Assembly (NCBI RefSeq): GCF_018350175.1
Contig: NC_058382.1
Location: 8,990,001 to 9,054,000, forward strand
Origin: Felis catus
Lineage: Eukaryota
DNA length: 64,000 bases
Direction of reading: 5' to 3'
Numbering within the stretch: position 1 is the stretch's first letter; the number at the start of each line of letters is the position of its first letter. A model generated the notes under the pieces. It worked only from the letters and a program-made list of their open reading frames with translations, had not been told where the DNA came from and did not search any database. Shown here one piece after another: positions 4,501 through 64,000 of the stretch. Both the position numbers and the translations under genes were made by a program.

Positions 4501-6554
4501 GGCCTCATAAGGGCCTTCCTCGGGGTGGAAAAGATACCTGAGCAGGGGGTAGCCTCTGCGAGTACCAAATATATACACACTCAGGTGGCACATTCTGTTT
4601 CCCCAAGGCCTGACCTCTCGGGACACACCCAGCCCTGTGGACCCAGACACCGTGGAGGTGCTGATGACATTTGAACCCGACCCAGCAGATTTAGCCCTGT
4701 CGAGCATTCCTGGCCACGAGACCTTTGACCCTCGGCGACATCGCTTCTCAGAGGAGGAACTTAAGCCCCAACCCATCATGAAGAAGGCTCGGAAGATCCA
4801 GGTACCAGAGGAGCAGAAGGTGAGCACTGCTAGATGTAGGATGTAGGCATGGCCTTTGCAGGCCCTACGGCCAGGGATGGCCCTTTCCTCCCAGTCAGGC
4901 CTGGGCTTCTCATTGGGGTTAGCTCTCACGGTTCCCTTAACCTACAGCCAAGGATCGGGCAGTCGTGCGAAGCCGTGGGGTGCGACGGGGCTGAGGTTTG
5001 GGCTTGAGATTTGCGAAGATGGTATCATTATGGGATGCAGTCTCAACCAGCCTTGCTGGGCCCAGTTGTGCAGGCTTGGGGCTGGGACCAGGCCCAGTTA
5101 CTAAGGACAGCATTCCTTAGCAGCAGGGTATCAGTCTGTTTCTTCTGAGCCGCTAGCCCTGCTGGGGCTGGTCCTTTGGTCTCTGATTTGGGGCATCGTT
5201 CAGGGTGCTTGCGTCCGCCTAGGATGCAGACTTTGACAGCCCGTCTGGGCCTTGTTTTCTGGGCCTGGACTGCTCCCTGGTGAGAGACCTCAAGCTCCCA
5301 TCAGCAGCCAGAGCTGCCTTCTGATTTGGGGCAGCGACCGCTTCTTTCCAGTCTTCTCCCTGTGGCCAATTCTGGGGCCTCCCCTAGTTAAGAGGTGTCC
5401 TGGCTGCTCACCAGACTTCACCTCACCCTTGTGTAAGACGCGACTGCTCGAAGCACCGAGGATTGGCCTGTAAACCCAGCCTGGACCGGCGGTTTCTCTT
5501 GTCATGGGGCCTGGGCCGGATTTACCCTAGTGAGCAGGGACGAGGCTTTAAGGAAACGGATGTGAGGTCATCTTTTGGAGCTCTGGGTGGCCCTTGTTAC
5601 TAAGGGGTGGGCCTCCTCAATCAAATTCTAGGACCAGAGAACCCTAAGTGTAATGGTGTGGGGAGGCCTCAGGATAGGCCCTTTTGCTAAAGTCCAGCCC
5701 TTCTGGCAACCAGGACCCGTTGGGAAGAAGGCAGCTCTCTGGCCTCTATTCAAGGCCAGTAGGTCAGAGACTGGCTACAGGCATTGGGACCACTTAGACA
5801 TTACCTTTGTTTGCTGGGGAAACAACAAGGAGGTTGCCTTGACAACCAGGTCCAAAGGCCCCCAGCTCTGGAAAGATTTATGGGACACAGAACCCCATCA
5901 CTGGGGAGCCTAGGCTTTCCTTAGCAACCAGGATCTGGGCAGGTGATGCATAAAGCAGTGCTTTTTATGGGGAGAAGCCCTCCGACCCTGAAGGCCCCAT
6001 CCCGTTGCTAGGGAAAGAGCATCCTTAGCAACCAGGGGCTACCTGGAGGCCCTTTGTTGGGTGAGGAGCAGTGGGGTCTGCTCTGCACAGTGGAAACATG
6101 AAACCAAATTGCTTTGAGTGTGGGTGGAACGATCTCACACCTTAGCTGTTGCTAGGGGCTTGCTCTCCTTAGCAACCGGATCCCTGGGTACCCATCCCAG
6201 GAGAGACCTGGTAACCTTTAAGCCCCACTGCTGGGCAAGAAACCCCCCCAGAGGGTCTCTTAGATGCCCTCCGTCCTTGAAGGCACAAGGAAAGCTGCTA
6301 CCCTTGGCCCTCAGTGCCTTCTCAAACCCCACCCCCAGGACGAGAAGTATTGGAGCCGGCGGTACAAGAATAACGAGGCAGCCAAGCGNNNNNNNNNNNN
6401 NNNNNNNNNNNNNNNNNNNNNNNNNNNNNNNNNNNNNNNNNNNNNNNNNNNNNNNNNNNNNNNNNNNNNNNNNNNNNNNNNNNNNNNNNNNNNNNNNNNN
6501 NNNNNNNNNNNNNNNNNNNNNNNNNNNNNNNNNNNNCAGCACGGAGCCCTGTGA
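1536..6554 (+). CDS. DBP: D-box binding PAR bZIP transcription factor, 325 aa; exons 1536-1674, 2577-2987, 4608-4819, 6339-6554
   Basis: [17 protein letters not shown]..., [27 protein letters not shown] domain [24 protein letters not shown], basic region [16 protein letters not shown]...QHGAL*; GT-AG junctions in phase (139+411+212+216=978 nt); leucine zipper hidden by N-run 6389-6536. Confidence 0.97.
3874..4024. promoter_or_regulatory. DBP: DBP intron-2 circadian E-box enhancer
   Basis: CACGTG at 3887-3892 and 4019-4024, CACGCG at 3930-3935 and 3940-3945, CACATT 7 nt before the first E-box; intronic CLOCK:BMAL1 E-boxes of Dbp are established in rodents. Confidence 0.8.
6389..6536. other. 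148-N gap inside DBP last coding exon
   Basis: Run of N; reading frame preserved across it. Confidence 0.99.
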
Positions 6555-7637: not shown

Positions 7638-10600
7638 TCAAGGCTCCCGACGCGGGCAGCCGGGAGGCCCAGTGAGCAGCGTGCCGAGGCCCGGATGCAT
7701 CTGCGCCTGCAGTGGCCCGTACTCCACCTGCTCTCCGTCCACAGTGAGCACGCCCCGAGGCGTGAGAGGCTCGAGGCGGAAGGCACGGGCCGCGGCGTAG
7801 CCCAGCTGCGGACAGCCCAGGCTGAAGTGGCTACCTCGCTCCATGGCCAGAAAAAGGCGTAGCAGCGCAGCACGGGAGATGCCACCACGCACCCAGCACA
7901 GGTGCACCAGGCCGTCGTCAAAGCGCGCGTGGGGAGCTGCCACCAGGTCTGCCCCCAGGTGGCTAGGGGAGATGGCCAGCATGAGCACAAAGTCCCCTTC
8001 CAGCGTCACCCAGCCTGGGGGGAGTGGGGTGCCCAAAGGAGGGAGCAGGTGGTCATGCGGACCCCTGGTAGAGACGGCTCCCGGAGAGCCGGGGGTGGGA
8101 GGGGGAAGCCCAGAGGATGCTAACGTTTCTGGGACCCCCTCGGTGATGGGTGACAGTAAAGCTGCCTTAGGGGAGCTAGGCGGTGAGGGCAGTGGTGGGT
8201 CTGGGGACAGGGGGGCATCCCCAGCCCCACCCCAGTCCCCGGCCAACTCTGGGCCCCCGCCATTGAGGGACAGGATGGGCAGGGGTTCAGGCGAGCCAGG
8301 GGAGGTCAGGGCGGGCTGGGGCAGGGGCAGGGGCAGGGGCAGGTCAGACACTGAACGATGCAGGGGTGAGTGTGCCACAGGTGGGGCCGGGGCCGGGGCC
8401 GGGGCCAGGGTCAGCTCTGACTTGGCACGGGGCAGGCCACGGGCAGGGGTGGGTGAGGTGGGCTCCACGGTGGCAGGGAGGTAGNNNNNNNNNNNNNNNN
8501 NNNNNNNNNNNNNNNNNNNNNNNNNNNNNNNNNNNNNNNNNNNNNNNNNNNNNNNNNNNNNNNNNNNNNNNNNNNNNNNNNNNNNNNNNNNNNNNNNNNN
8601 NNNNNNNNNNNNNNNNNNNNNNNNNNNNNNNNGGGAGCCGGAGGCCAGCGTCACAGACATCAGGTCCAGCGGGCGGCTGCCGCCCCGGCAGAGTAGCAGC
8701 GAGCAATTGAGCAGCAGGTCCACACCCAGGGCAGGCTCAAACCTTCACAGCCAGAGACGGATGGACACGGTGGGAAAGAGTAGACGGGCTTGGGTGAGAG
8801 GCACAGAGCACAGGGTAGCAGGAGAAAGGCACAGAAGGGGTGGGAAGCGGGGGGGGGGGAGGGGTGGTGGCCTGGCCCGCCTGCAGCAATCGGGCCCCCT
8901 CGGGATGGACTCTTCTTACTGAACCAGGCTCCCTGTCACTTCATTCCATGAGCGTTCCCCGAGTGCCATCTGTGTGCCAGGTACACTTCTGGGCACTAGG
9001 GACACAGCTGGGAACAATCCGGCAAAAATGTCGGGGGGGTGGGGGGTGTATGGGGAGCACCCCAGTCAGACTGATTGGCAGCGGGCTGGCGGGCAAAGGG
9101 GACTTGGGGACATTAAGTGCCAGGCCGCAGGAGGACTCATCCCTCCCCTCACGGTATCAGGCTCACCTACGACGCAGGACCCCACCTACCCCCCATGCTG
9201 GTTCACAGCTCCGGCCAAGGCATTGCCTGAGCCACACGGGAGGATGCCCACGGGCGTCTTCACAGCCTCTTCCCAGTCAGGGCGGTCCAGGAATCCGTTC
9301 AGCACCTGGAGGGCGGGAGACCAGACACCTGGGTCCCGGGGCCAGGCCAACCCCGCGCCCCAGTGCTCAAGCAGGATGCCCCCGCCCTACCTCAAACAGC
9401 AGCCCGTCTCCGGAGACCGTGACAATGCCGTCCCACTCACTCAGCCTCAGCCCCTGAACCAGCTCCCGGGCGTGGTTCTGTCGTTCTAGCGTGGGGAAGT
9501 CGGAGGTGAGCCAGGCTGTTCGGCTCTGTCCCGCCACCACGCCCCAGGACTCAAGGCTCAGGAGTCCTAGCCTCCCCCCCAACCCCAGCCCCTACCTCCA
9601 TCCCATCCTGACACAGCCCTTACCTGTCTGGATGAGGTTGAAGGACAGCCCAGCTTCGGAGATCATGGGCAGCACGTGGGTCTTACACCACTGCCAGGCC
9701 AGGCCCCGCCCCCCAAGGGGATTGACCAATAGGAGCAATCGGGGTGGCTTTGGCAGAAGCTCGGGGGTTATTTCTGCAAAGAGAGGGGAAGGCGTCTACA
9801 TGGGCCCCAGACCCAGGCCCCTCACCGCAGAAGCAGTAAACTGCAAACAGACCCAGGGGAACTGGTGGAGGGCTGGCACAGGAGACTGCTGGGAAGTCAA
9901 AGGTGGGTTTTTTGGTTTGTTTTTTTTTTTTCCTCTGGGGCTTCGGCTGCTGAGGCTCAGGTATGCACCTTCCGCACCCCCCGTCCCCCAAAGGCAGGAC
10001 TTGGGTGTCTAATCCCAATGCCCTTTGGACCCATGTGTGGGGGGAGGAAGGAGAGCTGTGGTTTTCACTTTCCTCTTCCTCAAACACCTGGAATCCAGGA
10101 TCAGGTTATTGCACCGTGCAAGGCCCCCTCCCCGTTCCCGTCCCCCAGGGCCCCCAGCCAGCCAGCCAGCAGGATCCTGGAAGTCCAAGGCAGACTCACC
10201 AGCTGGAGACCCTTGAACTTCTACCTTCCTGTGCCAACTGAGAAGCCTGGGGGGAGTGGGGCGCTCTGCCCAAAGGTCTCTGGCCACCCTCCACCCCCAA
10301 AGGCTGGATTAGATGCCACCTCTGGGCTCCTGGGCTGCCCTAGGGGACCTCTGTGAGTGCCTGTCCCTGGGTGGTGACTAATCATGTCTCAGTCTGCTGC
10401 TCGCGCCAGCCTGGGAACCTCTGACTCATCTGTGGTCAGGGCCCATGGAAGGGGGGAGGGGACACCGACAACCACTTATGGGAGCAGCAGACACCAATCG
10501 TGTTTTCTCTGCCTGTGGTTTTCTTCCTTCTGGGGCCCGTCCCTGTCTATCACTCTTTCGATACAGACCGAGAGAGACACAGCACAGACAGACACACAGT

Positions 10601-21656: not shown

Positions 21657-29477
<7,821 letters not shown>

Positions 29478-30271: not shown

Positions 30272-33200
30272 TCACAGGTCCGGGGGGTGCTCGGAGGCCT
30301 GGGCTGGGGTGGGGCTGGGATCGGGGTCCGGGCTGGCGTCCTCGGGGTCGTCCCAGGGGAAGGTGGGCAGCCCCCGCATCTGCTCCCGGTAGACGCGGTC
30401 GAAGGCTTCGCTCTGTGCCACCGTAAAGTGGTTCTTCCAGTCGCCGCACACCCCTGGAGGGGAGGGAGGGGCGGCGAGGGGAGGGAGGGGCGGCGAGGTG
30501 AGGCCGGGCGGGGTCATCCCCCGCGCCCCACATCCCAGCACCCTCCTGCCCACCTCCGGGCACCTCCCCGCTCCCTTTTCATCTCCACGTTTTTGCCCTT
30601 TTACCTCCTACTGATGGCTGCCTCTCACGCTGGCCCCCAGTCACCTGGCCAGACCCCTGGGCACCCGTATTGCCCCCTCCTTCCCTTGGCTCCCCCCCCC
30701 ACCCCGCCTCTCCTTTCAGTAGACCTGTTGCCTTCCTCCTGCAGCTTTACCCCCTGACCCCTTAAATCGCTCTGCCCAGAACCTCCCCCTCCCGCTCGAG
30801 CATTTCCTGGCTCCCTGTCCCTAACCTCCCTGGCTGGAAACGGGCATCCTCACTCCGGGGCTCCCACAACACCCACGCTACCTCCGTGATGGCTCCGCCC
30901 ATTGGGAATGTACCCGCACGCCCGTGCCAGGGAACGCGTGGAAGGGTGGCTTCCTCGGTTTCCCTCCTTAACCCTCCTGGCGACCCAGCAGGCGAGGGGC
31001 GTGACCTCTGCCCCTTCCACGGGCGCAGGGGGCCCTCGGGGCCGGCCTCGGGCTTCTCACCTGGGGCCAATGTCATTTGGATGGCAGTATTTTGAATTAC
31101 ATGACGCCCCCTAGTGAGGGGTGGGGGTGGGGCACCCTGTGATAGGCTGAATAATCACCCCCCCCCCCCAGATGTCCACGTCCTGGTCTTTGGAACCTAT
31201 GAATATGTGACCTTACAAGAGGGACTTTGCAGGTGTCATTGGTTAAGGATGGAGGTTTATCCAGGCAGACCCACAAGGGTCCCTATAAGAAGAGGGGGAG
31301 GGGCGCCCGGGGGGGGGGAGGGTGGCTCCGTCAGGTTGAGTGTCCGGCTCTTGATCTGGGCTCAGGACACGATCTCATGGTTTGTGAGATCGAGCCCCCC
31401 CCCCCCCATGGACGGTGCAGAGCCTGCTTGGGATTCCCTCTCTCTCTCTCTCTCTCTCTCTTTCCCTGTCTCTCTCTGCCCCTCCCCTGCTTGCTCCCTC
31501 TTGGTCTCTCTCAAAACAAACATAGGGAGAAAAAGAAAAAGAAAAAGAGGCGGGAGGCTTAGAGTCTGGGATTGGAAGACTGCCACCCTTCTGATCGGAA
31601 GACCCTGGAGGGGCGAGGAGCCCAGCAGTCCCTGTGGGGCTGGAAACGGAAAAGGCAGGGAACAGATTCTCCCCCCTGGAGCCTCCAGAAGGACCCGTCC
31701 CCCTGACACTTTTGATTTTTAACCCAGGGACACTGAGTTGGGACTTCTGACCAGAGCCGTAAGGGAATAAACGTGGGTTGTGTTAAGCCGCTAAGTTTGT
31801 GGTCTTGTAGCAGGAACAGGAAGAAGACACTCCCTCCCGCCCTTCCCGTAATCCGAGCGCTAGAATGTTTCTGGGCTGAACCTTAACACTAAGAAAGATT
31901 CACTAAGACTCTATATAGCCTCAGGACGGTTCAGTCCTGGCTGTGGCCTTGGACAGGGCCGTTTTGAGCTCTCTGGATGCCGGGCCCTGTGCTAAGCCCT
32001 GGGGGGGTAGGGGGGGGTCCCTCATGACCTTGTGAAGGCAGTGCTGCTCAGAGTGACCCCACGTTTCAGCTGGGAAAACCGAGGCCCAGAGAGGTGACAT
32101 GACCGCGCCAAGGTGCACAGCCAGGCGGTGGCCGGGTGAGCCTTGGAACCCCAGAGCCCCCGCACCTTTCCGGAGGAAGGCGCCGTGGCGTTGGTCCAGC
32201 AGGCTGGGGGGCAGCAGAGTGAAGTTGGACATGGCGTTGGCCTTCATGGCGCCGAAGGCCGAGTGCGCCACGACGGAGTCCAGCGCCTCCTTGCCCAGCG
32301 GCCAGCCCAAAAACTGGCATATGTCCTGCAGGCAGCTGTGGAGGTCCTGCGGGGGCCGGGGAGGGGGGTCAGGGAGGCCGGGCGGAGGGAGGGGACCCCA
32401 GGCAAGGAAGGAGCACCAGACCCAGAATCTGGATGTCCGAGTCCCCGACCCAGAGCCGTCTGGGTGGCTCTGCTGCTTTGCCTCAGTTTCCCCCACGACC
32501 AAGCCGAGGGATGGGGCGATGGCTTCCGAGAGTTTTCGCAGGCTGGGGGTTTCGGAGGGTTCCGCGGGTGGGAGGGAAGGGGCAGAGCCGGGGCAGAGGT
32601 CAGTTGGGCAGCTGGTGCACAATCACCCCCCACTCAGGTTAGAAGTGGGGGAAGGGGCGCCTGGGTGGCGCAGTCGGTTAAGCGTCCGACTTCAGCCAGG
32701 TCACGATCTCGCGGTCCGTGAGTTCGAGCCCCGCGTCGGGCTCTGGGCTGATGGCTCGGAGCCTGGAGCCTGTTTCCGATTCTGTGTCTCCCTCTCTCTC
32801 TGCCCCTCCCCCGTTCATGCTCTGTCTCTCTCTGTCCCAAAAATAAATAAACGTTAAAAAAAAAAAGTGGGGGTCAGCCTGTCTGTGCCCCAGATCTGCA
32901 CCTCCCCCCCGGGTGCCCATCCTGGAAGAGCAGCCTCACTCACTGGGTCACAGGACCAGATTCCCAGCCCGGCCTCCCCTCTCTCACTCCCCCTCCGCCC
33001 ACACCCCTGTCAGTCTCCCTCTGCTCCTCCCCTCCTCTGTTCTCGGCGCCCTTGCACTGGGCCTGCCTTGTCCTCTCCCCATGGACCCACGACTCGAGAC
33101 TCGGCCTCCTCCCTGGCCTCCCTGCCTCCAGGCGCCCACACCCAAAGCTGCTCCCGGCCCCCCTGTGGCTCCCCAGTGCCCTGGGACAGGAGTCCCCGCC

Positions 33201-36200
33201 CCCAGGCCTGGCTTTCAAGGACAGAAGTGGTCTGGCCTGGCCTGGCCTCTAATTCCAGAACTTAACCATTCCCTGCATTTTCCTCCCTGCAGCCTTGGCG
33301 GGGGGTGGCCGAGAATGCCCCGTGGCACCCTCCCCCACCAGGCAAACTTCCCCACCCAGATACAGCTCAAACATCACCCTCCTCCTGACAATGATCGATC
33401 GTTCAGGCCACATGGATTGAGGGGCGCCTGGGGGGCTCAGTCCGTTGAGCGTCCGACTTCGGCTCAGGTCACGATCTCACCGTCCACGGGTTTGAGCCCC
33501 ACATCTGTGCTGTCAGCACAGAGCGCACTTCGGGACTTCTGTCTCCCTCTCTCTCTCTCTGCCCCTCACCCTCTCTCTCTCTCTCATATCTGTGCCAAGC
33601 CCGCCAAGAGCCTTGCAGACAGGTGTCATTACCCCGGTCAGTAAATGGAGGCCCAGAGAGGGGAAGACACTCGTCCAGGGTCACACAGCTAGGGAGGAAC
33701 TCAGATTTCCGTGACCGAAACCCACGCTTCCCTCCTCTGTCTCGCCGCCTTCCCTGATACTTAGTGCCCAGGACAGTTAGCCTTCTCGTCAGCGCCGCCG
33801 GCCCCACGGCTCCGGATTTCCAGGCCATTCCTGGTTTTGCAACCCTACATCCCTTTATCTTCTTGAACCACCGGCGTGTCCCAGAAATTCTAACACGTGT
33901 GCAGTTCCTCACACGCTAGGGGCAGCCCAGAAGCTCTGCCAGGCTGCATGGCCCAGTTTTGGGCTTTGGAGAAAAAAGCTCGATGAAACAACAAAACAAA
34001 ACAAAACGAAGCGGGGGTGGGGTGGGGTGGGGGAGGGGATGGGGGGTGGCGGTTAACGCCAAACATCTTGTCTGGACCTTTCCATCAAAAGACGTTTACC
34101 GGGGGGCGCCTGGGTGGCGCAGTCGGTTAAGTGTCCGACTTCAGCCAGGTCACGATCTCACAGTCCGTGAGTTCGAGCCCCGCGTCGGGCTCTGGGCTGA
34201 TGGCTCAGAGCCTGGAGCCTGTTTCCGATTCTGTGTCTCCCTCTCTCTCTGCCCCTCGCCTGTTCATGCTCTGTCTCTCTCTGTCCCAAAAATAAATAAA
34301 CATTGAAAAAAAAAAAAAAAAAAAGACGTTTACCGGGGTGGGCAAAAGACTCAAGGCAGGTTGTCAACTGTCCCCCAGCTTCCTCCTCCATAAAACGGGG
34401 GTACTAACAATATTGGGGTGCACCCTTTACAATTATATTTTTTGCAGATCCAAACGGGTCCAATATGGGCAGCTGTAGGTGGTTCTAGGTAATCTGTGAC
34501 TCGCCTGTCCACACGCTGAGGATTAAGTGAGGTGTTTGGTGCGTGGTATTTTCGTTATTGCCGATCCCACAGGTCCTGCCTCGGGACCTAGTCGCTTTTA
34601 CTTTGCGCACTATATTAACACTTTGGGGTACCTTGTCAGATGGTCGTGCTATGCCGGGGGCTCCCTACGGCAACCTCACGAGCTGGCATTTTCCCGCCCA
34701 TTTTAAGGATGGGACGTCTGAGGCTCTGAGAGATTTGGGGGGACGTTAACTGCTTTGTCGGACACAAACATTCAGGTGCTTCCCCCTCCAAAAAGTACCG
34801 GCAGAGAGCATCCAAAAAAAAAAAAAAAATACATGAGGAGCGCCTGGGTGGCCCAGTCGGTTAAGCGTCCGACTCCCGTCTGACGGTTCGGGAGTTCGAG
34901 CCCCGCGTCGGGCTCTGTGTTGACAGCTCGGAGCCTGGAGCCCGCTTCCCATTCTGTGTCTCCCCCTCTCTCCAACCCCCCCCCCCGCCAAATAAAATAA
35001 AATCCATGACGTGTACATACAAGAAGGAAACATGTCTGGGGAGCTTGGGGAAGGGGCATGTAAGGGGACCCTCTCGGGTGCCCAGCTTCTGGAAACATCT
35101 TTGTTAAGGACCTGGAACGGCCGGGCGTGTTCGCTGGGGGCTGTGCCCCCAGAAGCCCGGCATCCTCCTTGCAGCGGGGCAAAGCAGTGGGCATTCTGGC
35201 ACGGCCCTTCTTCCAGGGAACTCTCCCTGATTGCCCCAGCCGGAAGGCATCTCTCTCCCAGGTGCCTGCTCCGGGGACGTCTGGTGGGGTCCGGACAGGA
35301 TCCCCGTCTAACTCCAAAGGCTCAGGGCCCACCCCTGGCTCCCACCTCCTCAGAGAAAAGCCAAGGTCCCTGCTGTGTCCCCCACCCCCACCCCTACCCC
35401 CACTCAGGCGGCTCTGGCCACATCCTCCTTTGCTCCCCTTGGAAACACATCAAGTGTGTGCTGTCACCTCAGGGCCTTTGCACTGGCCGGGTTCCCTCTG
35501 CCTGAGACCCCCCCCCCCCCACCAGCTATCCCCCTGGGTCGTCCTTGACCTTCAGATCTTTGCTTAAGTGTTATCTTCTCCCGGAGGCCTCCCCAACCGC
35601 CCTATTTAAAATTGTGCCCCCACACATTCCTTATCTTCCTTCCCGCCTTGCCTTTTCTCTCTCCTCTCCAGGTGCCATCTGTTTTCTTTGTTTGCCCATG
35701 GCCCCTCTCCTGCTCCCTGGCTCAGGACTCTGCTCTGTTCACCGCTGTGCCCCCAGTACCTACCTGGTGTGTTGGGGGAAGGGAAGGGGGCGGGAGGAGG
35801 GGTGGGGGAGGGAGGTGCGCCGGGTGGGGGTGGGGGTGGGGGCGCGGGATCACCTGCTGCAGTTCCTCGTAGGTGATGAACAGGAAGTTCTCTTTGCCCT
35901 TCATCCGAATCCAGCCCTTAATGTGGTCGAACCAGGAGCCAAACTGCACTACGGGGCGGAGGGGCAGGCGGATGAGGCCCCGGGCAGCAGGGCCACCCCC
36001 GCTGGGGGACCAGGGGGGGCCTGACTAGCCCCCCACGTGGCCCCGGGCATGGTGCCTCGGGGCTGGATGCCTCCCCCAAGCCCCCCCCCCCACATCTGGC
36101 CCCCGGAGAGAGAACCTTTGTCTCTCCATCTCTCTCTGTTTCTGCCCCTTTTCTGCATTTCTGTCTCTGTTTGTTTCTTCCCTTCTCTGTATCTGTGTGT

Positions 36201-39200
36201 CTGTCTGTCTGTCTCGGTTTCCTTCTGTCTCCTGCTCACTCTGTGCCTCTCAGTCTCTCTCCGCTTCTTTCTCCCCATTGCTGTGTCTGTCATCTGTCAT
36301 CGTCGCTCGGTCTCTTACATACCTGTCGCCTTCACTGTTAATCACGCCCTGTATCGCTGCCTCTCTCTCTCCTTCTTACCTTCCCTTACCCTTCCCTGCC
36401 CCCTTCCTGTCTGGGCCCAAGAGGGGCACCCCTTCTGGACCCCCACTCTGCCCCAGTCCTCACCTTCGCCTTTGAGAAAGTTCTGCAGGAACTGGTCAGG
36501 TGTGCCGGGGTCCTTCAACTGCCCGGCGATCTTGGAGTAATGATACAGCGAGACCACCACGTCCCGGGGGTTCCGGCCAATGTAGATCACCTGCGTATGG
36601 GTGTTGGGGAGAGGGGAGAAGGTGTCGCACACAGGCAGGACCCCACCCCAAAGACTGCATGCCCCCAAGCCTTCTCTGTTTCTGGGCTTGCAGCAGGAAG
36701 GCCTCAGGGTAGACTTCTCAGGGGACTTTCCTGCCAACAGTGGCTTAGATCAAGTTCATCGCATCCCAGAGGATGGGGAGACCTCCCTGCAGCCACATTC
36801 CAGCAGGACACGGGGACTGTTCCCGGACCAGGCGGGGTGACAGGTTGGCTTCAAGGGAATTAAGACCGGAGGACGGGGGTGGGGGGGTTCCGGGTGGCTC
36901 AGTCGGTTGGGCGTCTGGCTCTTGATTTCAGCTCAGGTCATGATCTCTCAGTTGGCAAGATGGAACCCCACATTGGGCTCTGTGCTCTCAGCATGGAGCC
37001 TGCTTGGGACTCTCTCTGTCCCTTTCTTTCTGCCCCTCCCTACCCCTCTCTAAATACATAAAACAGGAGGAGGAAGGCATGGGGGGCTCAGGATGGGGTT
37101 GATCAAGGTGAGAGGCACTGACTGACCCTCTTCGCCTCTGGGCCTGGTGTTCAAGGCTCCGACTCCCTGGCTCCTAGCTGATTACCAGCTTCCTATTCCA
37201 CAACCAAGCCTGAGTCAGCCCCACCAGATGGCTCCTTCCCTGGCCACCGTCTCCTTCCCCACGACCACGGTCAGCCACCCGGGCGGTCCGCCCCGACAAA
37301 CACCCCGGATGCCAAGGCTCGCGTGTCATCCCATGTCGCTGCCGGGAGGGTCAGGCAGCTCTGCTCGGGGACAGACACCTGGACGCTGACCCACACGCCT
37401 CCTTCCGCCACTGACTTTAGCCTCGGCCCTTTTGCTGGGATTCTCTGCGGCCGTGGGTGCAGCAGCTTGGCCGAGATCTGGGCCTTCTCGCAGCAAAGCC
37501 GTGAGCCTGACTGGGCGGGGGAGGGGGTCCCGGGGGGCCTCGTCTGTCTACACTCGCTTCCTTGGTGATGCGACCAGTCTCCTGCCTTTAATGGCCCCGT
37601 CCACCTCTGTGTCGACCAGCCAATTCCAGAGACGCGTGTCCTATTGAATCCTGATTCGGTTGCCTCACTGCCTACTGGCGACCCTCCACCTGGACGTCCA
37701 CGGGCCCCGACAGAGCTCCCGCCTTCCCCCGAGCCTCTCTCCCGGCCTCCCCAAGTCAGTTGACACCAGCATCATCTTCCCAGTTGCTCAAACCAAACGC
37801 CCTAGAGTCACCCTTGACTCATCTGGTTCACACCCACGCCCCATCTGCCAGCAAATCCTACTGCTGCTTCCACCTTCAACATACAACCCCAGCTCAGCCT
37901 CTTCTCTTCACCTCTGCGCGGGCCACCCCTTCCCACTCCGTGGGGCCCACCGTTGCCTCCCACCTGCGCGCTCTGCCCTCCTCGCCCACCCCTGCGGGCT
38001 GTTCGTGAAGTCATCACCTTTGCCCACGAGGAGATTTTTCTTCCCTATTCTCTCGGCCTGCCACCCTTTAGAACGTGGGCTTGCGAGGCAGGCATTGCTG
38101 CGCGTTTATTTACTGCCGTTCTCGATCAGGCACATAGTAGGTGCTCCGTAAATACCGTGCTGAATTCACCCCTTAGTTATGCGCTCCCCCACCCCCACAC
38201 GCCTCCCTCCTCCTGCACCTTGGCCTTGGAGGTGAAGAAGGCTTTGGCAAAGAGCTGGATGGGGAGGTGAGAACTCATGAGGCGGGGTCTGGGCTGGTCC
38301 GAGAGGCTGAAGGCACCCAGGATGGTCTCACACCAGGGCGCCCGCTTCCAGATGGGCACCGAGCGGATCCAGGATGGGTCCCCGTCCTTTAGGATTAAGC
38401 TGAGGATCTCAATCATCCAGTTGGTTCCTGTCAGGAGAAATTGGGCCAATCAATCAAAGGGCGGGGACGGGTGCAGGGGAGAGGGGCGGGGAAACAGAGT
38501 CGTGTTGGGCTTTACAGCGCCATTCACTACGGAGGTTGACCGCCCAGAGCCTCACGGCTGGCGGCGAGGCGAGGAAGTGACAGAGACCGGCTGGCTGTCC
38601 ACCGGACCCCATTTCCTTTCCCCACCAGGGAGATGAGGGGACCCCACTTCTCCGGCCTCTCCGGCAGCTACATGTGGGGCCGTGTGACCGAGTTCTGGCC
38701 AAGGAAGTGCAGGTGGCAGCCATTTCCAGGGCTGGCCCATAAACACCTCCTACGTGTCCCCCCCCCTCCCCCCCCCACTCTCTCTCCTTCCCTCTCTGCT
38801 GGCTGGATGCGAGGACCCAGTGGAAACTGGGGCTCCCGGGGATGGCAAGCCATGAGATGGAAGGAGCCAGAATGCCTGAGGCAGCCTGGATTTCCCCCAA
38901 CTTCCCTCCATCCCTCCACCAACTGGAGTTTGAGGAAACGACACAGAAGCTTCTAGCAGGCCTTCGTGTCTGAGATTCCGCGGCTCGCGGATGAGGACAG
39001 AAGCATCGTGTCCAAACACAGAGGGAGCTGGAATTAAATCCAGGCATCTGGACTTAAAATCTCAGCTCTCTTCACTGCCCCTTCTCGGGAGGAGCCCCTT
39101 GATCTCTGTGGGGGGATCTCATCAAATGGCCCAGTTCACACGTCCGGATTCCACGAGGATATAGGCAGGTCAGATGAGAAATAGAAAAAAATAATAATAA

Positions 39201-42200: not shown

Positions 42201-43658
42201 CTGCACCTTTCCTCGAGGTTACCCCCCCCAACCCTAATTATATAGTCAAAGGAGTGAGCGCGGGTTTACATAAAGCCTGTCTCGCCCGAGAAACTGACAA
42301 ATGTCTCCCCAGTTCACAGCCGCGTCTGCACCCGTGGCAGAGAATAAGCAACGTTTCGGGGAGGGAGGGAGAAAATGAAGATCGTCCCTCCCTCCGCCCC
42401 CACTTCCTTCCGCAAATATTTACTGAATGGGTGCCAGGCACCGACTGAGGCTCCAAGAATACAGCCGCGATCCAGGCACACTAAGCTGTCTGTCCTCCAA
42501 GAGCTCATGTTCTAGTGGGGGGGGGGGGGGAGATTGGAGGCTAAATCAACAACCAAAAACACAGCCAAGTGGCCGGTGGCGACAGGGGCTGAGAAGAAGA
42601 GTAGAGGCGAGTTCAAGGGGATAGAGCGGGACAGGGTGGGGACAGGTGCTGCAGCCCCGGAGGCCCCGGGAAGGCTTCCCCGAGGACGACTTGGTTGTGG
42701 GGGCGGAAGAGCGACACCTAGCGGAGGGGTCCGCCAGTGCAAACACCCAAGCTCCAGGTTCTGAGCGGATTCAGGCCTTCCCCCCACTGTTTCCTCTGCC
42801 TCCTTCCCCTGGGTGCTCCCTTCTCAGCCTCTGTGGCCACCTCCCCACCCCCACCCCCAGCAACCCCTCCCAGCAGGTACCTGACTTGGGGTAGGTGATG
42901 ATGAAGATGTCGTCGTCCTGCACATCAGCGTTCTCGACCATGCGGATGCTCTCGGGTGAGTAGATGCCCACGGGGAAGGGGATCCCCTTGTACCTGAAGT
43001 ATTCGCCTGACAACTTCTGGCTGTTGGAATATGGGGGAGACACCGTGAGGACCGGGGAGGAGACGAGGACTGAGGTCACCCCCGGAGGCGCGGTGGGGGG
43101 GGGGGGCGGAGGCAGAGAAATCTCAGGGCAGGAGGGACGGTGAGCAGGGAGACGGGGGAGGGGTACCCCCCTAGCTAGAGAATCCTGGCGACAAACTTTC
43201 CCTGAACCTCATTTCTTCATCTGCCAACTGGGAATGGTTTACCAGAACCCCACAACAATCCTATGCGGTGACAGTGATTAGCATCCCCCTTTTAGGAATG
43301 AAGAGAGCGAGGCACAGAGAGGTTGGGTGACTTTCCCAAAGCCACACAGCCGGTGGAACATGGAACACTTCACATCTGCATAGTGGGGCTAAGTGCTTTC
43401 CTTATATTGATTCTTTGGCCCGACCCTCGAGGGAGAGGCGAAGTCACCCCCTCCCCCTGCCATGTTACCAACGAGGAAATCGAAGCCACAGAAATTACGT
43501 GTCGTGCCCACTCTTTTGTGCAAGGCCACAGGGCTGGCAAAGCCCACTTATGAAACCCCATCCAGGGGTCACCATGAGGCTGAGATGCCCTTTTCATTTT
43601 TTTTTAGGTTTATTTACTCATTTTGAGAGAGAGAAGGAACGGGTGCAAGTGGGGCAGG

Positions 43659-59199: not shown

Positions 59200-62116
59200 T
59201 GGCTCGTTTTTTTAAAGAGACTTTTGTCCTGAGTGCCTGTACTCCGACAGCGAGATATCGGCTTTTTGGGTTTGGGGGGGGGGCGGTAAAAAAATGGAAT
59301 CACGCTGCAGCTGGTGTCCTGTGATTCGTTCCTTTCGCTGGACATGAGGAGCCACTCGTGTGGCGGTTGCGTAACAAGGGTCCCCGTGGGAAGGTCCCGC
59401 TGCCCTTTGCTCCCCTGTGATCCAGACTTGCCTGCTGTCTGCCCCTCCTCTCCCCTGCTCACCTGCCTTCTGGTCCTGCCTCATCCTTGCTCGGGGCTTG
59501 CCTCATCTTTCCTCCATTCATTCCTTGACATCCTTCTCAGAGACCTGCTGGGGCCCCGGGGAGGCCCAACTCTGTCCCTACCCGCGAACTGTCCACGGTT
59601 TGATGCGTGGGATGCCTTTGAAGCTGGAGGTGTGGTCAGGGACCAAGGATCCGAAATTGGGGGAGAAAGACTTCGCGGGAGAGAGGTCGTCCCCGGGCAA
59701 AGGAATGTTTGGAAATACGCAAAGGCCTGAAGGTGGGAGGTCCAGGGCCCGAGAGTGAGAGCGGGTGTGGAGGCAACCAGGTGGGGCTCAGGCACTGAGG
59801 AAGGTGGGGACTGTGCGGAGAGGAGCTCCCACGGAAGAAGCAGGGCGAACGGCGAGACCCCGGCCCTACTCCTCCATTTTACAGCCAGCTCCGTCTTGAT
59901 CTCTAGTATTTCTGCTCCAGAGTAGGATTTCTCTGGGACAGAGAAATCTGTGTCTTAAACGTTGTAGACACCATCAGCATGGGCGCTAGGGAGCCACAGA
60001 GGGAACTTGAGCTGGAGAGGGCTACGGGTGGCTTTGGAGATGAGAAAAGACTTCTCCGGGAATCCTCAGAGGAAATGAACGTGCAAAGGCACTGGGGCAG
60101 AGAAGGTGAGGCATGTGGCCAGGGAATGTGAAGTCCTGGGGTACAGGCAGGAGGCCTGACCACCAGGGCCCAGAAAACCTTGGGACTGGGGGGAGGGGAG
60201 GGGCAGCTCTGGGAAGGACCGGAGACAGGGAGGCTGGGGTGAGACTGGGGGTGGTGGGAGAGGAGGCGTGGGGGGGGACACGCAGAAGGAGGGTGTGGGT
60301 GGAGAGTCCAGGGACAGGATGGTGGGGCTGGACGCTGACACGCCTGCGGGAGGGAACAGCAAAGCCTGGGGTGACCGGGACCCATGTGGACATCCCCAGA
60401 TGGAAACCCAGGAGGAGGCACGATTCCGGGGAGCCCCTGAGCCCCTGCCCCACGCTGCGGATGGTGTGTGTCTTAAGCCCGGGAGGGGCCCAGAGGGGAT
60501 GGTAGGGGCCCCTGGGAGACACATCCTTCTGGGCCCAGGGCTTCCAGAAGCTCAGAGAAGAAAGTCCGAGGGGCTAAAGGCACTCGCTCGGGCCTACACG
60601 TGGCTCACGGGCGACGGTTCGTGACCCCCACTTTTCAGACGGGAACCCTGAGGCTCAGGAGGGCACGTGACTGGATCAAGGTCACGCACTGAGCGAGGGC
60701 TGGCCATCTGCCGGCCCTCTGGCTGTGGGGGAGCAGAGAGGAGGGAGGCTCCCAGGTGGAGGGAAGCCGGGGGCTCTCGGGGGGGAGACAGGGCAGAAAG
60801 CCAGAGGGCCAGGAGAAAGGGACAGGAGAATGCGGAGCAGAAAATGCCAGGCCTTGGCCCGCAGCAGGGCGGGGACAGCCCGGAGCACCTCAGCCCCGGA
60901 GACACAGAGCCCAGAGCCCCTGGGAGCCTTGTCTACATCACACAGCTCTCAGAATTCAAGTGCTGGGATCCCTGGAGCCCAGGGAAGCTCCTGGCTGAGG
61001 GCAGGGAGGGCAGGGGAAGGGAGGGCAGGGTGCAGCCTGGGATGGCTGGAGGGGCCCAGAAGGCCAGCGGACAGACTTGCCTGGCCCGCCCGCCTGGCCT
61101 GCCAGAGAGTAAGATATCAGGGGTCGGAGATCATGTAGGCAGCGCACCTTGTGATCTCGGGCTGGCTGCCTGCCCTCTCTGAGCCTCCACTCGCCCATCT
61201 GAAGACGGGGCCACAGGCAGGGGGCGCGGGGGGTGGGGCGCGGGTGTGGCCAAGGCTATGGAGGACAGGAGGAACCGCAGACTCCTGGGGCAGACCGATG
61301 GGGTTCGGGTTTGCTTCCGGCCGCCCCATCACGGCCGTGGCACTTTCCCTCTCAGCCTCAGTTTCCCCATCCGGAAAGCGGGTACCGGTCGAGTGTCCGA
61401 CTCACCCCCAGGAACAGAGGAGTCATGCTCCGGAGGTGGGGAGGGCTGTGTGCTGACCTCTGCCTCGAGGGCCGGGCCGAGGAGCCCAGGGCCCATCCTC
61501 CGACCCTCCAAGCTTCCCCCCTGGGGACCCGGGGACCCGGGGACAAGGGCTCTGGCTCTGGGACCCAACTGCATCCCGGACCCCGCCCACCCCTGCCGTC
61601 TCCCAAACAGAGCAGGGACCACATCCTGAGCCCCTGTGAGGGGCAGCACCCCCATCTGAGGGTCCCTTGGAGTGTCCGGGAGGAAAAGGCGACATCAGAC
61701 CCTCCTGTGTCCTGACTGTTTGCTTTGAGCCAAATCCCTACCCTCACCCAGCCCCGCATCAGGAAGACGCCTCCGAAAGAGAGACAAACTGAGGCCCCAC
61801 AGCGGTCAGGGCCACCTCACAGGTCCCAGCTGCCAACTCGGCACAGTCCGTGCCCCACTCCCTTCCAGGAGGGACCTGCATCCCAGGGTGGAAGGGCCAG
61901 CTGGGTCCCGCCAGGCCAGGCGGGAGGCAGCAGGAGCCTGGCAGCCACCGGGGCAGAAACGGACCTGGGGCTCTCCCCCCAGGCCACCTCCTCCAGGCGG
62001 CGGGGTGGAGGGGGGATCTCCTGGCTCGCGCCCGGCTCTGGGCCTCACCTGATGTCCGAGATGTCCTCAGAGCCGTCCCACAGGGCCGGGATCCGGGGCT
62101 CCGCGGGCCCGTCCAT
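30272..62116 (-). CDS. SULT2B1: Hydroxysteroid/cholesterol sulfotransferase SULT2B1b, 333 aa; exons 62049-62116, 42881-43020, 38219-38427, 36464-36590, 35854-35948, 32166-32346, 30272-30453
   Basis: [23 protein letters not shown]|[12 protein letters not shown]; PAPS motifs [36 protein letters not shown]; catalytic SSHLP; 1002 nt in phase; AATAAA (minus) 30259-30264. Confidence 0.95.
31137..31815 (+). mobile_element. MaLR (MLT1-type) solo LTR interrupted by a CAN-SINE (~31300-31548)
   Basis: tgtgataggctgaataat...gatgtccacgtcct...tgaatatgtgacctta...gagcctccagaagga...aataaa...ttaagccgctaagtttgtgg, typical of MLT1. Confidence 0.7.
32654..32866 (+). mobile_element. Young felid SINE (SINEC_Fc-like) with TSD aagtgggg
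   Basis: Full-length; near-identical to copies at 34101 and 44130. Confidence 0.92.
33421..33590 (+). mobile_element. CAN-SINE
   Basis: SINE head plus CT tract. Confidence 0.85.
34101..34324 (+). mobile_element. Young felid SINE with clear TSD (aaaagacgtttaccggg)
   Basis: TSD visible on both flanks; long pure poly-A tail. Confidence 0.93.
34836..35000 (+). mobile_element. CAN-SINE
   Basis: SINE head, B-box, tail. Confidence 0.85.
36882..37063 (+). mobile_element. CAN-SINE (older)
   Basis: gggtggctcagtcggtt...gagcctgcttggga... Confidence 0.82.
37600..38165 (+). mobile_element. LINE2 3' fragment
   Basis: cagttgctcaaaccaaacgcctagagtcacccttgactc... and terminal ggcacatagtaggtgctccgtaaataccgtgctgaat. 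Confidence 0.6.
38580..38960 (+). mobile_element. Old MaLR LTR fragment (MLT1H/J-like)
   Basis: gtggggccgtgtgaccgagttctggccaagg...agatggaaggagcc motifs. Confidence 0.5.
39255..41850. mobile_element. Old L1 3'-end fragments (~40000-40615, 41060-41340, 41800-41850) interrupted by six CAN-SINEs (39255-39361 -, 39770-39998 -, 40619-40844 +, 40845-41060 +, 41390-41612 -, 41613-41797 -)
   Basis: L1M motifs tttacccaagataaatgaaaaca, aacaaccccaatgtcc, gaaagaagccagac, gaattgtacacttta; SINE heads and tails. Confidence 0.8.
43600..44450. mobile_element. Nested cluster of four CAN-SINEs (43600-43820 -, 43868-44091 +, 44130-44342 -, 44350-44450 -)
   Basis: TSDs aagaaattaacacatg and ttcaggatttt visible. 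Confidence 0.9.
46002..46325. mobile_element. Two CAN-SINEs (46002-46213 +, 46230-46325 -)
   Basis: SINE heads and tails. Confidence 0.85.
48305..48544 (-). mobile_element. CAN-SINE
   Basis: (TTTA)n tail, (GA)n, reverse head. Confidence 0.88.
49559..50960. mobile_element. CAN-SINE cluster (49559-49790 +, 50270-50457 -, 50505-50720 +, 50722-50960 +) with MIR at ~49860-50015
   Basis: SINE heads, CT tracts, AATAAA-rich tails; MIR core gaggcacagagagg...gcagagccgggatttg. Confidence 0.85.
51000..51995 (+). mobile_element. Old L1 3' fragment with inserted MLT1-type LTR (~51275-51757)
   Basis: L1 motifs tttatagcaacactgttc...gaaagaagccagac; LTR motifs tggcccccgaagacgtcc, ccctaaatgtaatcacaagggtcctt, gagcctccagg. 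Confidence 0.7.
52015..52945 (-). mobile_element. Three CAN-SINEs (52015-52226, 52230-52330, 52765-52945)
   Basis: Reverse-strand SINE bodies. Confidence 0.85.
53849..55497. mobile_element. CAN-SINE cluster (53849-54050 +, 54052-54260 +, 54278-54440 +, 54915-55120 +, 55180-55272 - partial, 55275-55497 -)
   Basis: SINE heads and tails. Confidence 0.87.
56365..57200. mobile_element. hAT-Charlie relics (MER3/MER33-like) interrupted by a CAN-SINE (56680-56896 -)
   Basis: gaactttctgtgatgatggaaac...gtggctactgagcccttgaaatg; ttacatgttgaaatg...gggttaagtaaaata. Confidence 0.6.
58965..59200 (-). mobile_element. CAN-SINE followed by long poly-C run
   Basis: Reverse SINE body; C homopolymer ~59167-59198. 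Confidence 0.8.
60314..61616 (+). repeat. Left arm of ~1.3 kb inverted segmental repeat (in SULT2B1b intron 1)
   Basis: Reverse complement of 62641-63976; by manual alignment ~22 substitutions and 4 indels. Confidence 0.97.
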
Positions 62117-62640
62117 GGCAGGCGGCGGGTGAGGGCGGGGAGGGGAGGACGCGCAGGGAGCCGGCGGCGCGCGGGGACCGGGTATGTGCAGCGGTGACGC
62201 CTGCCACCCGGGGCGTCCGCCAGGTGCCTACCTCCGCGCCCAAGGGGAGGGGCAGCACCCAGCCGGTTCTCCAAGCTGCTACCCACGCCTCCGACAGCGG
62301 GGAGAGGCTGGGAGAGAGCCGCCCTTCTCCGAGGGTGGGGAGGGGAGGAGGGTGATGGGCACATCTGAGGAATGTCGCCCGTGGCGTGGCGGGGCTGGGG
62401 GGGGGAGGGGCGGGGGGCAGAGTCCGAGGCGTAAGTCCAGCGCCACAAGGGAACCTCCCGGGCTGGTGGTTCTGGGCATACCTCTCTGGAGCCTCGGTTC
62501 GCTGCGGTGACAAAAAGGACAGTCCCATCGAAGAGAGTTCATTCATTCATCCACACTTGCATTCATTCAAGAAATCTTTACTGAGCGCCCAGGGGGCCAG
62601 GCAGGCGCTGTTCTAAGGGCTGGGACCCTGTGAGGAACCA

Positions 62641-63976
62641 CCTGCTCTGTTTGGGGGAGGTGGGAGAGGGCAGGGGTGGGCGGGGTCCGGGATGCAGCTG
62701 GGTCCCAGAGCCAGAGCCCTTGTCCCCGGGTCCCCGGGTCCCCAGGGGGGGAGCTTGGAGGGCCGGAGGATGGGCCCTGGGCTCCTCGGCCCGGCCCTCG
62801 AGGCAGAGGTCAGCACACAGCCCTCCCCACCTCCGGAGCATGACTCCTCTGTTCCTGGGGGTGAGTCGGACACTCGACCGGTACCCGCTTTCTGGATGGG
62901 GAAACTGAGGCTGAGAGGGAAAGTGCCACGGCCGTGATGGGGCGGCCGGAAGCAAACCCGAACCCCATCGGTCTGCCCCCGGAGTCTGCGGTTCCTCCCG
63001 TCCTCCATAGCCTTGGCCACACCCGCGCCCCCCCCCACCCCACGCCCCCTGCCCGTGGCCCCGTCTTCAGATGGGCGAGTGGAGGCTCAGAGAGGGCAGG
63101 CAGCCAGCCCGAGATCACAAGGTGCGCTGCCTACATGATCTCCGACCCCTGATATCTTACTCTCTGGCAGGCCAGGCGGGCGGGCCAGGCGAGTCTGTCC
63201 GCTGGCCTTCTGGGCCCCTCCAGCCACCCCAGGCTGCAGTGTTGGGCCCCTCCCCTGCCCTCCCCTCCCCTGCCCTCCCTGCCCTCAGCCAGGAGCTTCC
63301 CTGGGCTCCAGGGATCCCAGCACTTGAATTCTGAGAGCTGTGTGATGTAGACAAGGCTCCCAGGGGCTCTGGGCTCTGTGTCTCCGGGGCTGAGGTGCTC
63401 CGGGCTGTCCCCGCCCTGCTGCGGGCCAAGGCCTGGCATTTTCTGCTCCGCATTCTCCTGGCCCTTTCTCCTGGCCCTCTGGCTTTCTGCCCTGTCTCCC
63501 CCCCCCCCCCCGAGAGCCCCCGGCTTCCCTCCACCTGGGAGCCTCCCTCCTCTCTGCTCCCCCACAGCCAGAGGGCTGGCAGATGGCCAGCCCTCGCTCA
63601 GTGCGTGACCTTGATCCAGTCACGTGCCCTCCTGAGCCTCAGGGTCCCCGTCTGAAAAGTGGGGGTCACGAACCGTCGCCCGTGAGCCACGTGTAGGCCC
63701 GAGCGAGTGCCTTTAGCCCCTCGGACTTTCTTCTCTGAGCTTCTGGAAGCCCTGGGCCCAGAAGGATGTGTCTCCCAGGGGCCCCTGCCATCCCCTCTGG
63801 GCCCCTCCCGGGCTTAAGACACACACCGTCCGCAGCATGGGGCGGGGGCTCAGGGGCTCCCCGGAATCGACCCTCCTCCTGGGTTTCCATCTGGGGATGT
63901 CCACATGGGTCCCGGTCACCCCAGGCTTTGCTGTTCCCTCCCGCAGGCGTGTCAGCGTCCAGCCCCACCGTCCTGT
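62641..63976 (-). repeat. Right arm of ~1.3 kb inverted segmental repeat (upstream of SULT2B1b exon 1)
   Basis: Reverse complement of 60314-61616; mirrored ORF translations in the track confirm it. Confidence 0.97.
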
Positions 63977-64000
63977 TGCTGACTTATTTTTGTTTTTGTT

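What the first reader, a model, noticed from the sequence alone, without database searches (positions are those of the whole stretch)
60314..63976. SULT2B1b exon 1 and promoter sit in a 1-kb cassette between 1.3-kb inverted repeats: a candidate invertible switch
Seen: 60314-61616 and 62641-63976 are reverse complements (1303 vs 1336 bp; by hand ~22 substitutions, mostly transitions, plus indels of about 7, 14, 3 and 9 nt; ~98% identity). The arms are not one transposon but unique GC-rich DNA with small MIR pieces, and both outer ends lie inside the window. The 1,024-bp spacer holds the first coding exon of SULT2B1b (62049-62116), its donor and ~520 bp upstream. Established: near-identical inverted repeats promote recurrent inversion of the spacer by non-allelic recombination and are homogenised by gene conversion. 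Inference: flipping the spacer would point the promoter and exon 1 away from exons 2-7 with near-identical flanking context, turning SULT2B1b off and starting an outward transcript. About 1.7% divergence seems too high for two misjoined alleles, which argues for a real duplication.
Basis: partly seen in the sequence, partly recalled or inferred. Interest (0 to 1): 0.85.

Follow-up and report, generated by a model that had tools for sequence, protein, structure and literature searches.

The report
Inverted duplication around cat SULT2B1b exon 1
In a cat genome, the first exon and promoter of the cholesterol sulfotransferase gene SULT2B1b lie between two 1.3-kb mirror-image copies of ordinary DNA; this looks like a real, few-million-year-old duplication, and nothing found here suggests it acts as a flipping on/off switch.

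Summary
Bases 60314-61616 and 62641-63976 are reverse complements: 1303 vs 1336 nt, 23 substitutions (1.77%) and indels of 7, 14, 3 and 9 nt. The 1,024-nt spacer is unique. On the minus strand it carries SULT2B1b exon 1 (62116..62049) and about 520 nt upstream of it.

Seventeen of the 23 differences are transitions and about half lie at CpG sites, with losses on both arms. That is biological divergence, not read error. The arms hold diverged old repeat pieces, have no further copy in the window, and show no transposon ends. I therefore read a real inverted segmental duplication about 3-4 My old (about 70%, or about 85% counting all readings in which the repeat is real).

The switch idea is geometrically correct but unsupported:
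- The longest perfect match between the arms is 195 nt, at or below the usual threshold for efficient recombination.
- The arms have not been homogenised.
- Exon 1 is spliced to exon 2 in the cat protein model and in five other feliform annotations.

Neither decisive test could be run. The structure and both orientations are therefore unverified in reads.

Only 24 nt lie beyond the right arm, so the repeat may extend further. This is an ordinary kind of feature and of low-to-moderate interest.

The parts
60314..61616 (+). Left arm of the inverted repeat (1303 nt). Lies in SULT2B1 intron 1 and begins 432 nt downstream of the exon 1B donor in the gene's direction.
   Evidence: GC 0.67, CpG o/e 0.43
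61617..62640 (.). Unique 1,024-nt spacer. Not palindromic and no significant direct repeat at its ends.
62049..62116 (-). Coding part of SULT2B1b exon 1B: ATG at 62116, 22 codons plus 2 nt, GT donor at 62048-62047.
   Evidence: identical to the N-terminus of cat protein P0001
62117..62640 (-). 5' UTR and presumed TATA-less, GC-rich core promoter of SULT2B1b. A small CpG island spans about 62000-62200 (CpG o/e 0.87) and GC boxes lie at 62133, 62319 and 62408. The promoter function is inferred, not shown.
62641..63976 (-). Right arm of the inverted repeat (1336 nt), the reverse complement of the left arm. Lies upstream of the SULT2B1b promoter.
63977..64000 (.). The only 24 nt seen beyond the right arm. 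T-rich and unrelated to the left outer flank. Too short to prove that the repeat ends here.
42881..43020 (-). SULT2B1 exon 2 (shared part of exon 1A), about 19 kb downstream of exon 1B. Boundaries set by eye from splice signals.
38219..38427 (-). SULT2B1 exon 3, used as the search query. Boundaries approximate.
30275..36590 (-). SULT2B1 exons 4-7, at about 36590-36464, 35948-35854, 32346-32166 and 30453-30272. The gene looks intact.

Best explanation
This is a real, evolutionarily young inverted segmental duplication in the domestic cat genome. About 1.3 kb of ordinary GC-rich DNA next to SULT2B1b exon 1B was copied in reverse orientation to the other side of the exon and its promoter. The likely cause is a replication or repair template switch of the fold-back type (inferred). 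The two copies have since diverged almost independently for roughly 3-4 million years. The structure is essentially static: the gene is read in the assembled orientation (exon 1B spliced to exon 2). Recombination between the arms could in principle invert the 1-kb cassette and abolish SULT2B1b. If it happens at all, it would be a rare germline mutation producing a null allele, not a regulated or frequent switch.
For: Structure: searches give 1303/1336-nt arms, 1.77% substitutions and a unique spacer. Biological rather than technical divergence: 17 transitions against 6 transversions, about 12 of 23 at CpG sites, with CpG lost on both arms (6 on the left, 4 on the right). The arms are CpG-depleted (o/e 0.43), as expected for germline-methylated DNA that decays by deamination. 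The arms are old unique DNA copied as a block: they contain three mutually diverged pieces of an old interspersed repeat (z about 4 against shuffles), have no other copy in 64 kb, and show no target-site duplication or LTR-type termini. No assembly gap is nearby; the only N runs are at 6389-6536 and 8485-8632. A simple fold-back read artefact would have no 1-kb unique spacer. Allelic misjoining does not create an inverted copy, and 1.8% is far above what I recall for cat heterozygosity. Age: the Kimura two-parameter (K2P) distance of 0.0179 at the published cat rate (0.86e-8 per generation at 3.8 years) gives about 4 My. Against frequent exchange: the longest perfect tract is 195 nt against MEPS of about 134-232 nt in mitosis and 300-500 nt in meiosis. 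Differences cover the whole length of the arms. By the relation d = 2*mu/c (my own knowledge, as used for Y-chromosome palindromes), conversion is at most about 1e-6 per site per generation. Orientation in use: cat model P0001 and models from Prionailurus, Panthera pardus, P. tigris, P. onca and Hyaena begin with the exon 1B peptide joined to exon 2.
Against: Only 24 nt are visible beyond the right arm, so the true extent is unknown. Substitutions are mildly over-dispersed (variance/mean 2.1, P about 0.01). This could reflect CpG-dense patches or some patchy conversion. Close spacing of repeats can relax the homology requirement for recombination (alpha-globin example), so occasional inversion is not excluded. 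The protein models prove orientation only in the assemblies that were annotated.
Confidence: 0.7

Rival explanations
1. Assembly artefact. Only one arm exists in the cat genome, and the second, inverted copy was produced by a misjoin of divergent haplotypes or by chimeric molecules.
For: Not excluded, because no reads could be laid on the region. The structure sits in very GC-rich DNA (0.65-0.77), where sequencing and assembly are hardest. One of the indels is a run of seven G.
Against: The differences have the spectrum of real mutation, CpG transitions on both arms, so two distinct biological templates are required. Two alleles differing by 1.8% plus four indels in 1.3 kb would be exceptional. 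An allelic misjoin gives direct, not inverted, copies. Fold-back chimeras give palindromes without a 1-kb unique spacer. No gap flanks the structure.
Confidence: 0.12
2. A germline inversion polymorphism. The repeat is real, and recombination between the arms has produced, perhaps recurrently, cat chromosomes with the cassette flipped. Those chromosomes are SULT2B1b-null alleles segregating in the population.
For: The geometry is right. Inverted repeats of 1.6-24 kb mediate recurrent polymorphic inversions in humans, some of which move first exons. Closely spaced repeats can recombine through short matches. Some felid models lack exon 1B (Panthera uncia P0272, Acinonyx isoform X2 P0271), which is only a lead.
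Against: The arms are shorter than those of validated cases. The longest perfect tract is 195 nt. There is no homogenisation. In cat the SULT2B1a start codon reads ACG, so a flipped allele would probably be a full null of a gene whose loss causes recessive ichthyosis in humans, and it would be kept rare. Six feliform annotations show the 'on' orientation.
Confidence: 0.1
3. Two independent insertions of the same young 1.3-kb repeat family (for example solo LTRs) on either side of exon 1B, not a local duplication.
For: The two arms have the same extent, as copies of one element would. Genome-wide copy number could not be checked.
Against: There is no other copy in 64 kb. There are no target-site duplications and no TG...CA termini. 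The arms contain several mutually diverged pieces of an old repeat and are 67% GC. This is typical of old host DNA and not of a young element.
Confidence: 0.03
4. A programmed or somatic invertible switch. The cassette flips in tissues to turn SULT2B1b off and to start an outward transcript.
For: Only the geometry: promoter plus first exon between inverted repeats, with near-identical context after flipping.
Against: To my knowledge no recombinase-driven promoter inversion is known in mammals. The arms are generic DNA, 1.8% diverged and with short perfect tracts, which suppresses mitotic recombination. There is no homogenisation.
Confidence: 0.02

Closest known systems
Small inverted segmental duplications that mediate human polymorphic inversions by non-allelic homologous recombination (Aguado et al. 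2014, PMC3961182)
   Same: Two low-copy inverted repeats of kilobase size and high identity bracket a unique segment that contains gene parts. Inversion would separate a first exon from the rest of its gene, as described for some human cases.
   Different: The arms here (1.3 kb) are below the 1.6-24 kb range studied, and the spacer (1 kb) is far below the 5.1-226 kb inverted segments. Identity is 98.2%, with perfect tracts of at most 195 nt. No second orientation has been observed.
Fold-back inverted duplications with a single-copy spacer (Hermetz et al. 2014, PMC3907307)
   Same: An inverted copy and its original are separated by a normal-copy spacer. An exact 15-nt inverted block sits at the inner ends of the arms (61602-61616 / 62641-62655), which could be the short inverted sequence that primed a fold-back.
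   Different: Those cases are megabase-scale, pathogenic, and adjoin terminal deletions or translocations. This one is 1.3 kb, interstitial, fixed in an assembly, and leaves the gene intact. The 15-nt block may simply be arm sequence set apart by a 9-nt indel.
Sex-chromosome palindromes with arm-to-arm gene conversion (primate X and Y; my own knowledge)
   Same: Inverted arms around a unique spacer that can flip.
   Different: Those arms are 10 kb to over 1 Mb and more than 99.9% identical because of frequent conversion. Here the arms are 1.3 kb and 1.8% diverged, so such exchange is rare or absent.
Bacterial invertible promoters (fimS, hin; my own knowledge)
   Same: A promoter-bearing cassette lies between inverted repeats, and inversion would uncouple it from its gene.
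   Different: Those use short recombination sites and a dedicated site-specific recombinase, and they flip at high frequency. None of this applies here.

Membership tests
Inverted segmental duplication (low-copy inverted repeat) | Two copies of at least 1 kb with at least 90% identity | tested here: met
   1303/1336 nt. Identity is 98.2% over aligned columns and 96.4% counting gap positions.
Inverted segmental duplication (low-copy inverted repeat) | Inverted orientation on the same molecule around a unique spacer | tested here: met
Inverted segmental duplication (low-copy inverted repeat) | Not a high-copy transposable element | tested here: inconclusive
   No further copy in the window, no target-site duplication or LTR termini, and old diverged repeat pieces inside the arms. 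The genome-wide copy number could not be tested.
Inverted segmental duplication (low-copy inverted repeat) | Present in independent reads or assemblies of the species | not testable with these tools
Inverted-repeat-mediated (NAHR) polymorphic inversion | Both orientations of the spacer observed | not testable with these tools
   No reads and no second cat assembly were available. Protein models show the 'on' orientation in six feliform annotations.
Inverted-repeat-mediated (NAHR) polymorphic inversion | Uninterrupted identity reaching the minimal efficient processing segment | tested here: inconclusive
   Longest tracts are 195, 140, 136 and 129 nt, against 134-232 nt (mitotic) and 300-500 nt (meiotic). 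The requirement is relaxed for close repeats.
Inverted-repeat-mediated (NAHR) polymorphic inversion | Traces of arm-to-arm exchange (homogenised tracts) | tested here: not met
   The 23 substitutions run the full length of the arms, and the largest gap of 196 nt is as expected by chance (P = 0.50). The mild clustering falls in CpG-dense bins.
Programmed invertible promoter switch (phase variation type) | Short specific recombination sites as the inverted repeats | tested here: not met
   The arms are 1.3 kb of generic host DNA.
Programmed invertible promoter switch (phase variation type) | Dedicated site-specific recombinase | not tested
   The window was not searched systematically. The nine long ORFs scanned gave only a FAM83-type SACK1 domain.
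Fold-back inverted duplication with spacer | Single-copy spacer between the inverted copies | tested here: met
Fold-back inverted duplication with spacer | Short inverted sequences at the spacer/duplication boundary | tested here: inconclusive
   An exact 15-nt inverted block lies at the inner ends, set off from the rest of the arm by a 9-nt indel. It cannot be told apart from ordinary arm sequence without an outgroup.
Fold-back inverted duplication with spacer | Adjacent terminal deletion, translocation or ring | tested here: not met
   The structure is interstitial. All seven SULT2B1 exons and the convergent FAM83-type neighbour are in place.

The most novel reading that the evidence does not exclude
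The repeat is real, and the cassette is found in both orientations among domestic cats. That would be a recurrent, repeat-mediated inversion making a SULT2B1b-null allele. Because the SULT2B1a start codon is ACG in cat, it would probably be a complete null. It would be a hidden structural cause of recessive ichthyosis-like skin disease that SNP-based screens would miss.
Probability: 0.07. Interest if true: 0.55.

Novelty: new member of a known kind. Interest (0 to 1): 0.25.

Why it matters
If the repeat is real, the only remaining start of a gene needed for the skin's cholesterol-sulfate barrier sits between two recombination substrates. One crossover between them would silence the gene without changing copy number or any coding base. 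Exome or SNP screens would miss such an allele. The locus is therefore worth a glance when cats with unexplained scaling skin disease are studied. It is also a compact case for measuring how short and how diverged inverted repeats can be and still flip. As a kind of feature it is ordinary: small inverted duplications are common in mammalian genomes, and nothing here indicates regulated switching.

Tried and rejected

No human sequence was looked up.

3. Spliced model. The exons were not joined. I searched exon 3 alone by reference and then used the database protein it found.

4. PDB search with the 22-residue exon 1B peptide gave no hit. The query is too short, so this is uninformative.

5. 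Search for other copies of the boundary sequences or old repeats elsewhere in the window gave nothing useful.

6. The idea that the two spacer ends are halves of one old repeat or a target-site duplication was rejected. The local alignment score was 13, against a shuffle mean of 10.8 and maximum of 16.

7. The bacterial-type promoter/terminator scan is irrelevant for a mammalian locus and was empty.

8. The scan's earlier notes gave no second look at this structure and no notes on similar artefacts. Three look-ups failed on wording or range.

9. Literature. No paper links SULT2B1 to an inverted repeat or inversion, and none treats the cat locus.

10. Which arm is the original could not be decided. 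Junction microhomology is at most 1-2 nt and there is no outgroup.
Full report
**The observation**

The inverted repeat is in the sequence as described. The repeat finder reports four collinear inverted blocks of 477, 252, 208 and 376 nt, 97-99% complementary, covering 60309-61605 and 62661-63981. blastn of the left region against the reverse complement of the right region gives one alignment, 60314-61605 to 63976-62661, with 23 mismatches and 24 gap positions. A separate exact 15-nt match carries the homology to 61616/62641. A global alignment gives 1303 aligned columns, 1280 matches and 23 substitutions (1.77%). It also shows indels of 7, 14, 3 and 9 nt, all extra in the right arm.

The arms have no third copy in the 64-kb window. 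The 1,024-nt spacer is not itself palindromic. Its ends share no significant direct repeat: score 13 against a shuffle mean of 10.8 and maximum of 16. The only N runs lie more than 50 kb away, at 6389-6536 and 8485-8632.

**Gene context**

SULT2B1 lies on the minus strand.
- Bases 62116..62049 translate to [22 protein letters not shown] and are followed by a GT donor.
- An in-frame stop lies upstream of the ATG.
- The remaining exons lie at about 43020-42881, 38427-38219, 36590-36464, 35948-35854, 32346-32166 and 30453-30272.

Exon 1B is therefore about 19 kb upstream of exon 2. The left arm lies in intron 1, starting 432 nt past the donor. The right arm lies upstream of the promoter region.

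Exon 3, searched alone by reference, found a Felis catus protein model (P0001, UniRef A0ABI7YXZ7). It is identical to the window over exon 3, and its first residues are the exon 1B peptide joined to the exon 2 peptide read from the window. The window is therefore cat, and the exon 1B to exon 2 splice is an annotated one.

A FAM83-type SACK1 domain ORF at 21753-22544 on the plus strand is the convergent neighbour. This fits the synteny I recall for this locus.

The spacer is TATA-less and GC-rich. It has a small CpG island at about 62000-62200 (o/e 0.87) and three GC boxes. That the core promoter lies in the spacer is a reasonable inference but is not shown.

**Is the repeat real or an artefact?**

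The judgement therefore rests on internal evidence.

- *Mutation spectrum.* The differences look like mutation, not error: 17 transitions against 6 transversions, about 12 of 23 at CpG sites, and CpG lost on both arms (six on the left, four on the right). The arms are CpG-depleted (o/e 0.43), as expected for germline-methylated DNA. Two separate biological lineages of this sequence therefore exist.
- *Not alleles.* Two alleles differing by 1.8% plus four indels over 1.3 kb would be far above what I recall for cat heterozygosity. Misjoined alleles also give direct copies, not inverted ones.
- *Not a fold-back chimera.* A fold-back chimeric read gives a palindrome with no 1-kb unique spacer, and its arms would not differ by CpG transitions.
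- *Not a young transposon.* The arms contain three mutually diverged pieces of an old interspersed repeat (z about 4 against shuffles; by eye and from memory these resemble MIR cores). They have no target-site duplications and no TG...CA termini.

I put the reality of the repeat at about 85%.

One caveat concerns its extent. Only 24 nt, T-rich, lie beyond the right arm. If an insertion interrupts the homology there, the arms could be longer than 1.3 kb.

**Age**

The Kimura two-parameter (K2P) distance is 0.0179. At the published cat rate of 0.86e-8 per bp per generation at 3.8 years, this gives about 4 My. Rates of 3e-9 to 1e-9 per year give 3-9 My. Because half the changes are at hypermutable CpG sites, the true age is probably nearer the lower end. 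This assumes no gene conversion.

**Does it work as a switch?**

A crossover between the arms would turn exon 1B and its upstream 520 nt to face away from exons 2-7, leaving almost the same 1.3 kb on each side. Everything else argues that this is rare at best.

- The longest uninterrupted identity between the arms is 195 nt, followed by 140, 136 and 129 nt.
- In mammalian cells, reducing uninterrupted homology from 232 to 134 nt cut intrachromosomal recombination 20-fold. Meiotic minimal efficient processing segments are estimated at 300-500 nt, although very close repeats can use shorter matches (PMC2583991).
- The arms are not homogenised. Substitutions run the full length of the arms, and the largest difference-free gap (196 nt) is what chance gives (P = 0.50). 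The mild over-dispersion (variance/mean 2.1, P about 0.01) coincides with CpG-dense bins.
- With the relation d = 2*mu/c (my own knowledge, as used for Y-chromosome palindromes), 1.8% divergence caps conversion at about 1e-6 per site per generation. Crossovers, and hence inversions, would be rarer still. That is a mutation rate, not a switching rate.
- Protein models beginning with the exon 1B peptide joined to exon 2 exist for cat, Prionailurus bengalensis, Panthera pardus, P. tigris, P. onca and Hyaena hyaena. In all these assemblies the exon points the working way. This is weak evidence, because assemblies without such a model are not informative. The single Panthera uncia model and Acinonyx isoform X2 lack exon 1B, which I record only as a lead.
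- In cat the SULT2B1a start codon reads ACG (43046..43044 on the minus strand). A flipped allele would therefore probably abolish the whole gene. SULT2B1 loss causes recessive congenital ichthyosis in humans (PMC11392796), so such alleles would be selected against.

**Most likely origin (inferred)**

The likely origin is a fold-back or template-switch event during replication or repair, which leaves an inverted copy separated from its original by a single-copy spacer. Large human inverted duplications show such a spacer, with short inverted sequences at the spacer boundary (PMC3907307).

Here an exact 15-nt inverted block sits at the inner ends of the arms, set off from the rest by a 9-nt indel. 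It could be a priming microhomology or simply arm sequence. Without an outgroup I cannot say which arm is the original.

**Comparison with known things**

The closest known kind is the small inverted segmental duplication that mediates polymorphic inversions by non-allelic homologous recombination. Validated human cases use repeats of 1.6-24 kb around 5.1-226 kb segments, are often recurrent, and sometimes move first exons (PMC3961182). The cat structure is smaller and more diverged, and no second orientation is known.

It is unlike sex-chromosome palindromes, whose arms are kept more than 99.9% identical. It is also unlike bacterial invertible promoters, which use short sites and a dedicated recombinase. 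Both comparisons rest on my own knowledge.

No paper in the library links SULT2B1 to an inverted repeat or treats the cat locus.

**Verdict**

| Question | Result |
|---|---|
| Observation | Confirmed |
| Real, static, young inverted duplication | About 0.70 |
| Assembly artefact | About 0.12 |
| Segregating germline inversion | About 0.10 |
| Repeat-family insertions | About 0.03 |
| Programmed or somatic switch | About 0.02 |
| Novelty | New member of a known kind |
| Interest | Low to moderate |

Noticed in passing
window 43044-43046 (minus strand): At the position where I recall the SULT2B1a start codon, the cat sequence reads ACG (ctc ACG gtg tct ccc cca ...). The 'a' isoform is therefore probably lost or started at a non-AUG codon, which leaves exon 1B as the only ordinary start of the gene.
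   Followed up: partly
window 21753-22544 (+): An ORF with a SACK1 (FAM83-type) domain, E = 7e-39. It is the expected FAM83E-like neighbour, convergent with SULT2B1.
   Followed up: partly
window 6389-6536 and 8485-8632: Two N runs of exactly 148 nt each, about 2 kb apart.
   Followed up: no
proteins P0272 (Panthera uncia) and P0271 (Acinonyx jubatus isoform X2): These felid SULT2B1 models lack the exon 1B peptide and start from other upstream sequence. This could be annotation noise, a gap, or a different local structure in those assemblies.
   Followed up: no
protein P0001 (Felis catus, UniRef A0ABI7YXZ7): This cat model follows exons 1B-4 and then runs out of frame. The exon 5 peptide is missing and the tail is frame-shifted, so it is a mis-spliced or exon-skipping model rather than the functional enzyme.
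   Followed up: no
window 60000-60500: A strongly G-rich strand bias (GC skew up to +0.42) with runs of GGGG/GGGAGG just outside and across the outer end of the left arm. It has possible G-quadruplex-forming character next to the duplication breakpoint.
   Followed up: no
window 61523-61544 and 62722-62743: An 8-nt tandem repeat (GGGGACCC, 2.8 copies), present identically in both arms near their inner ends.
   Followed up: no
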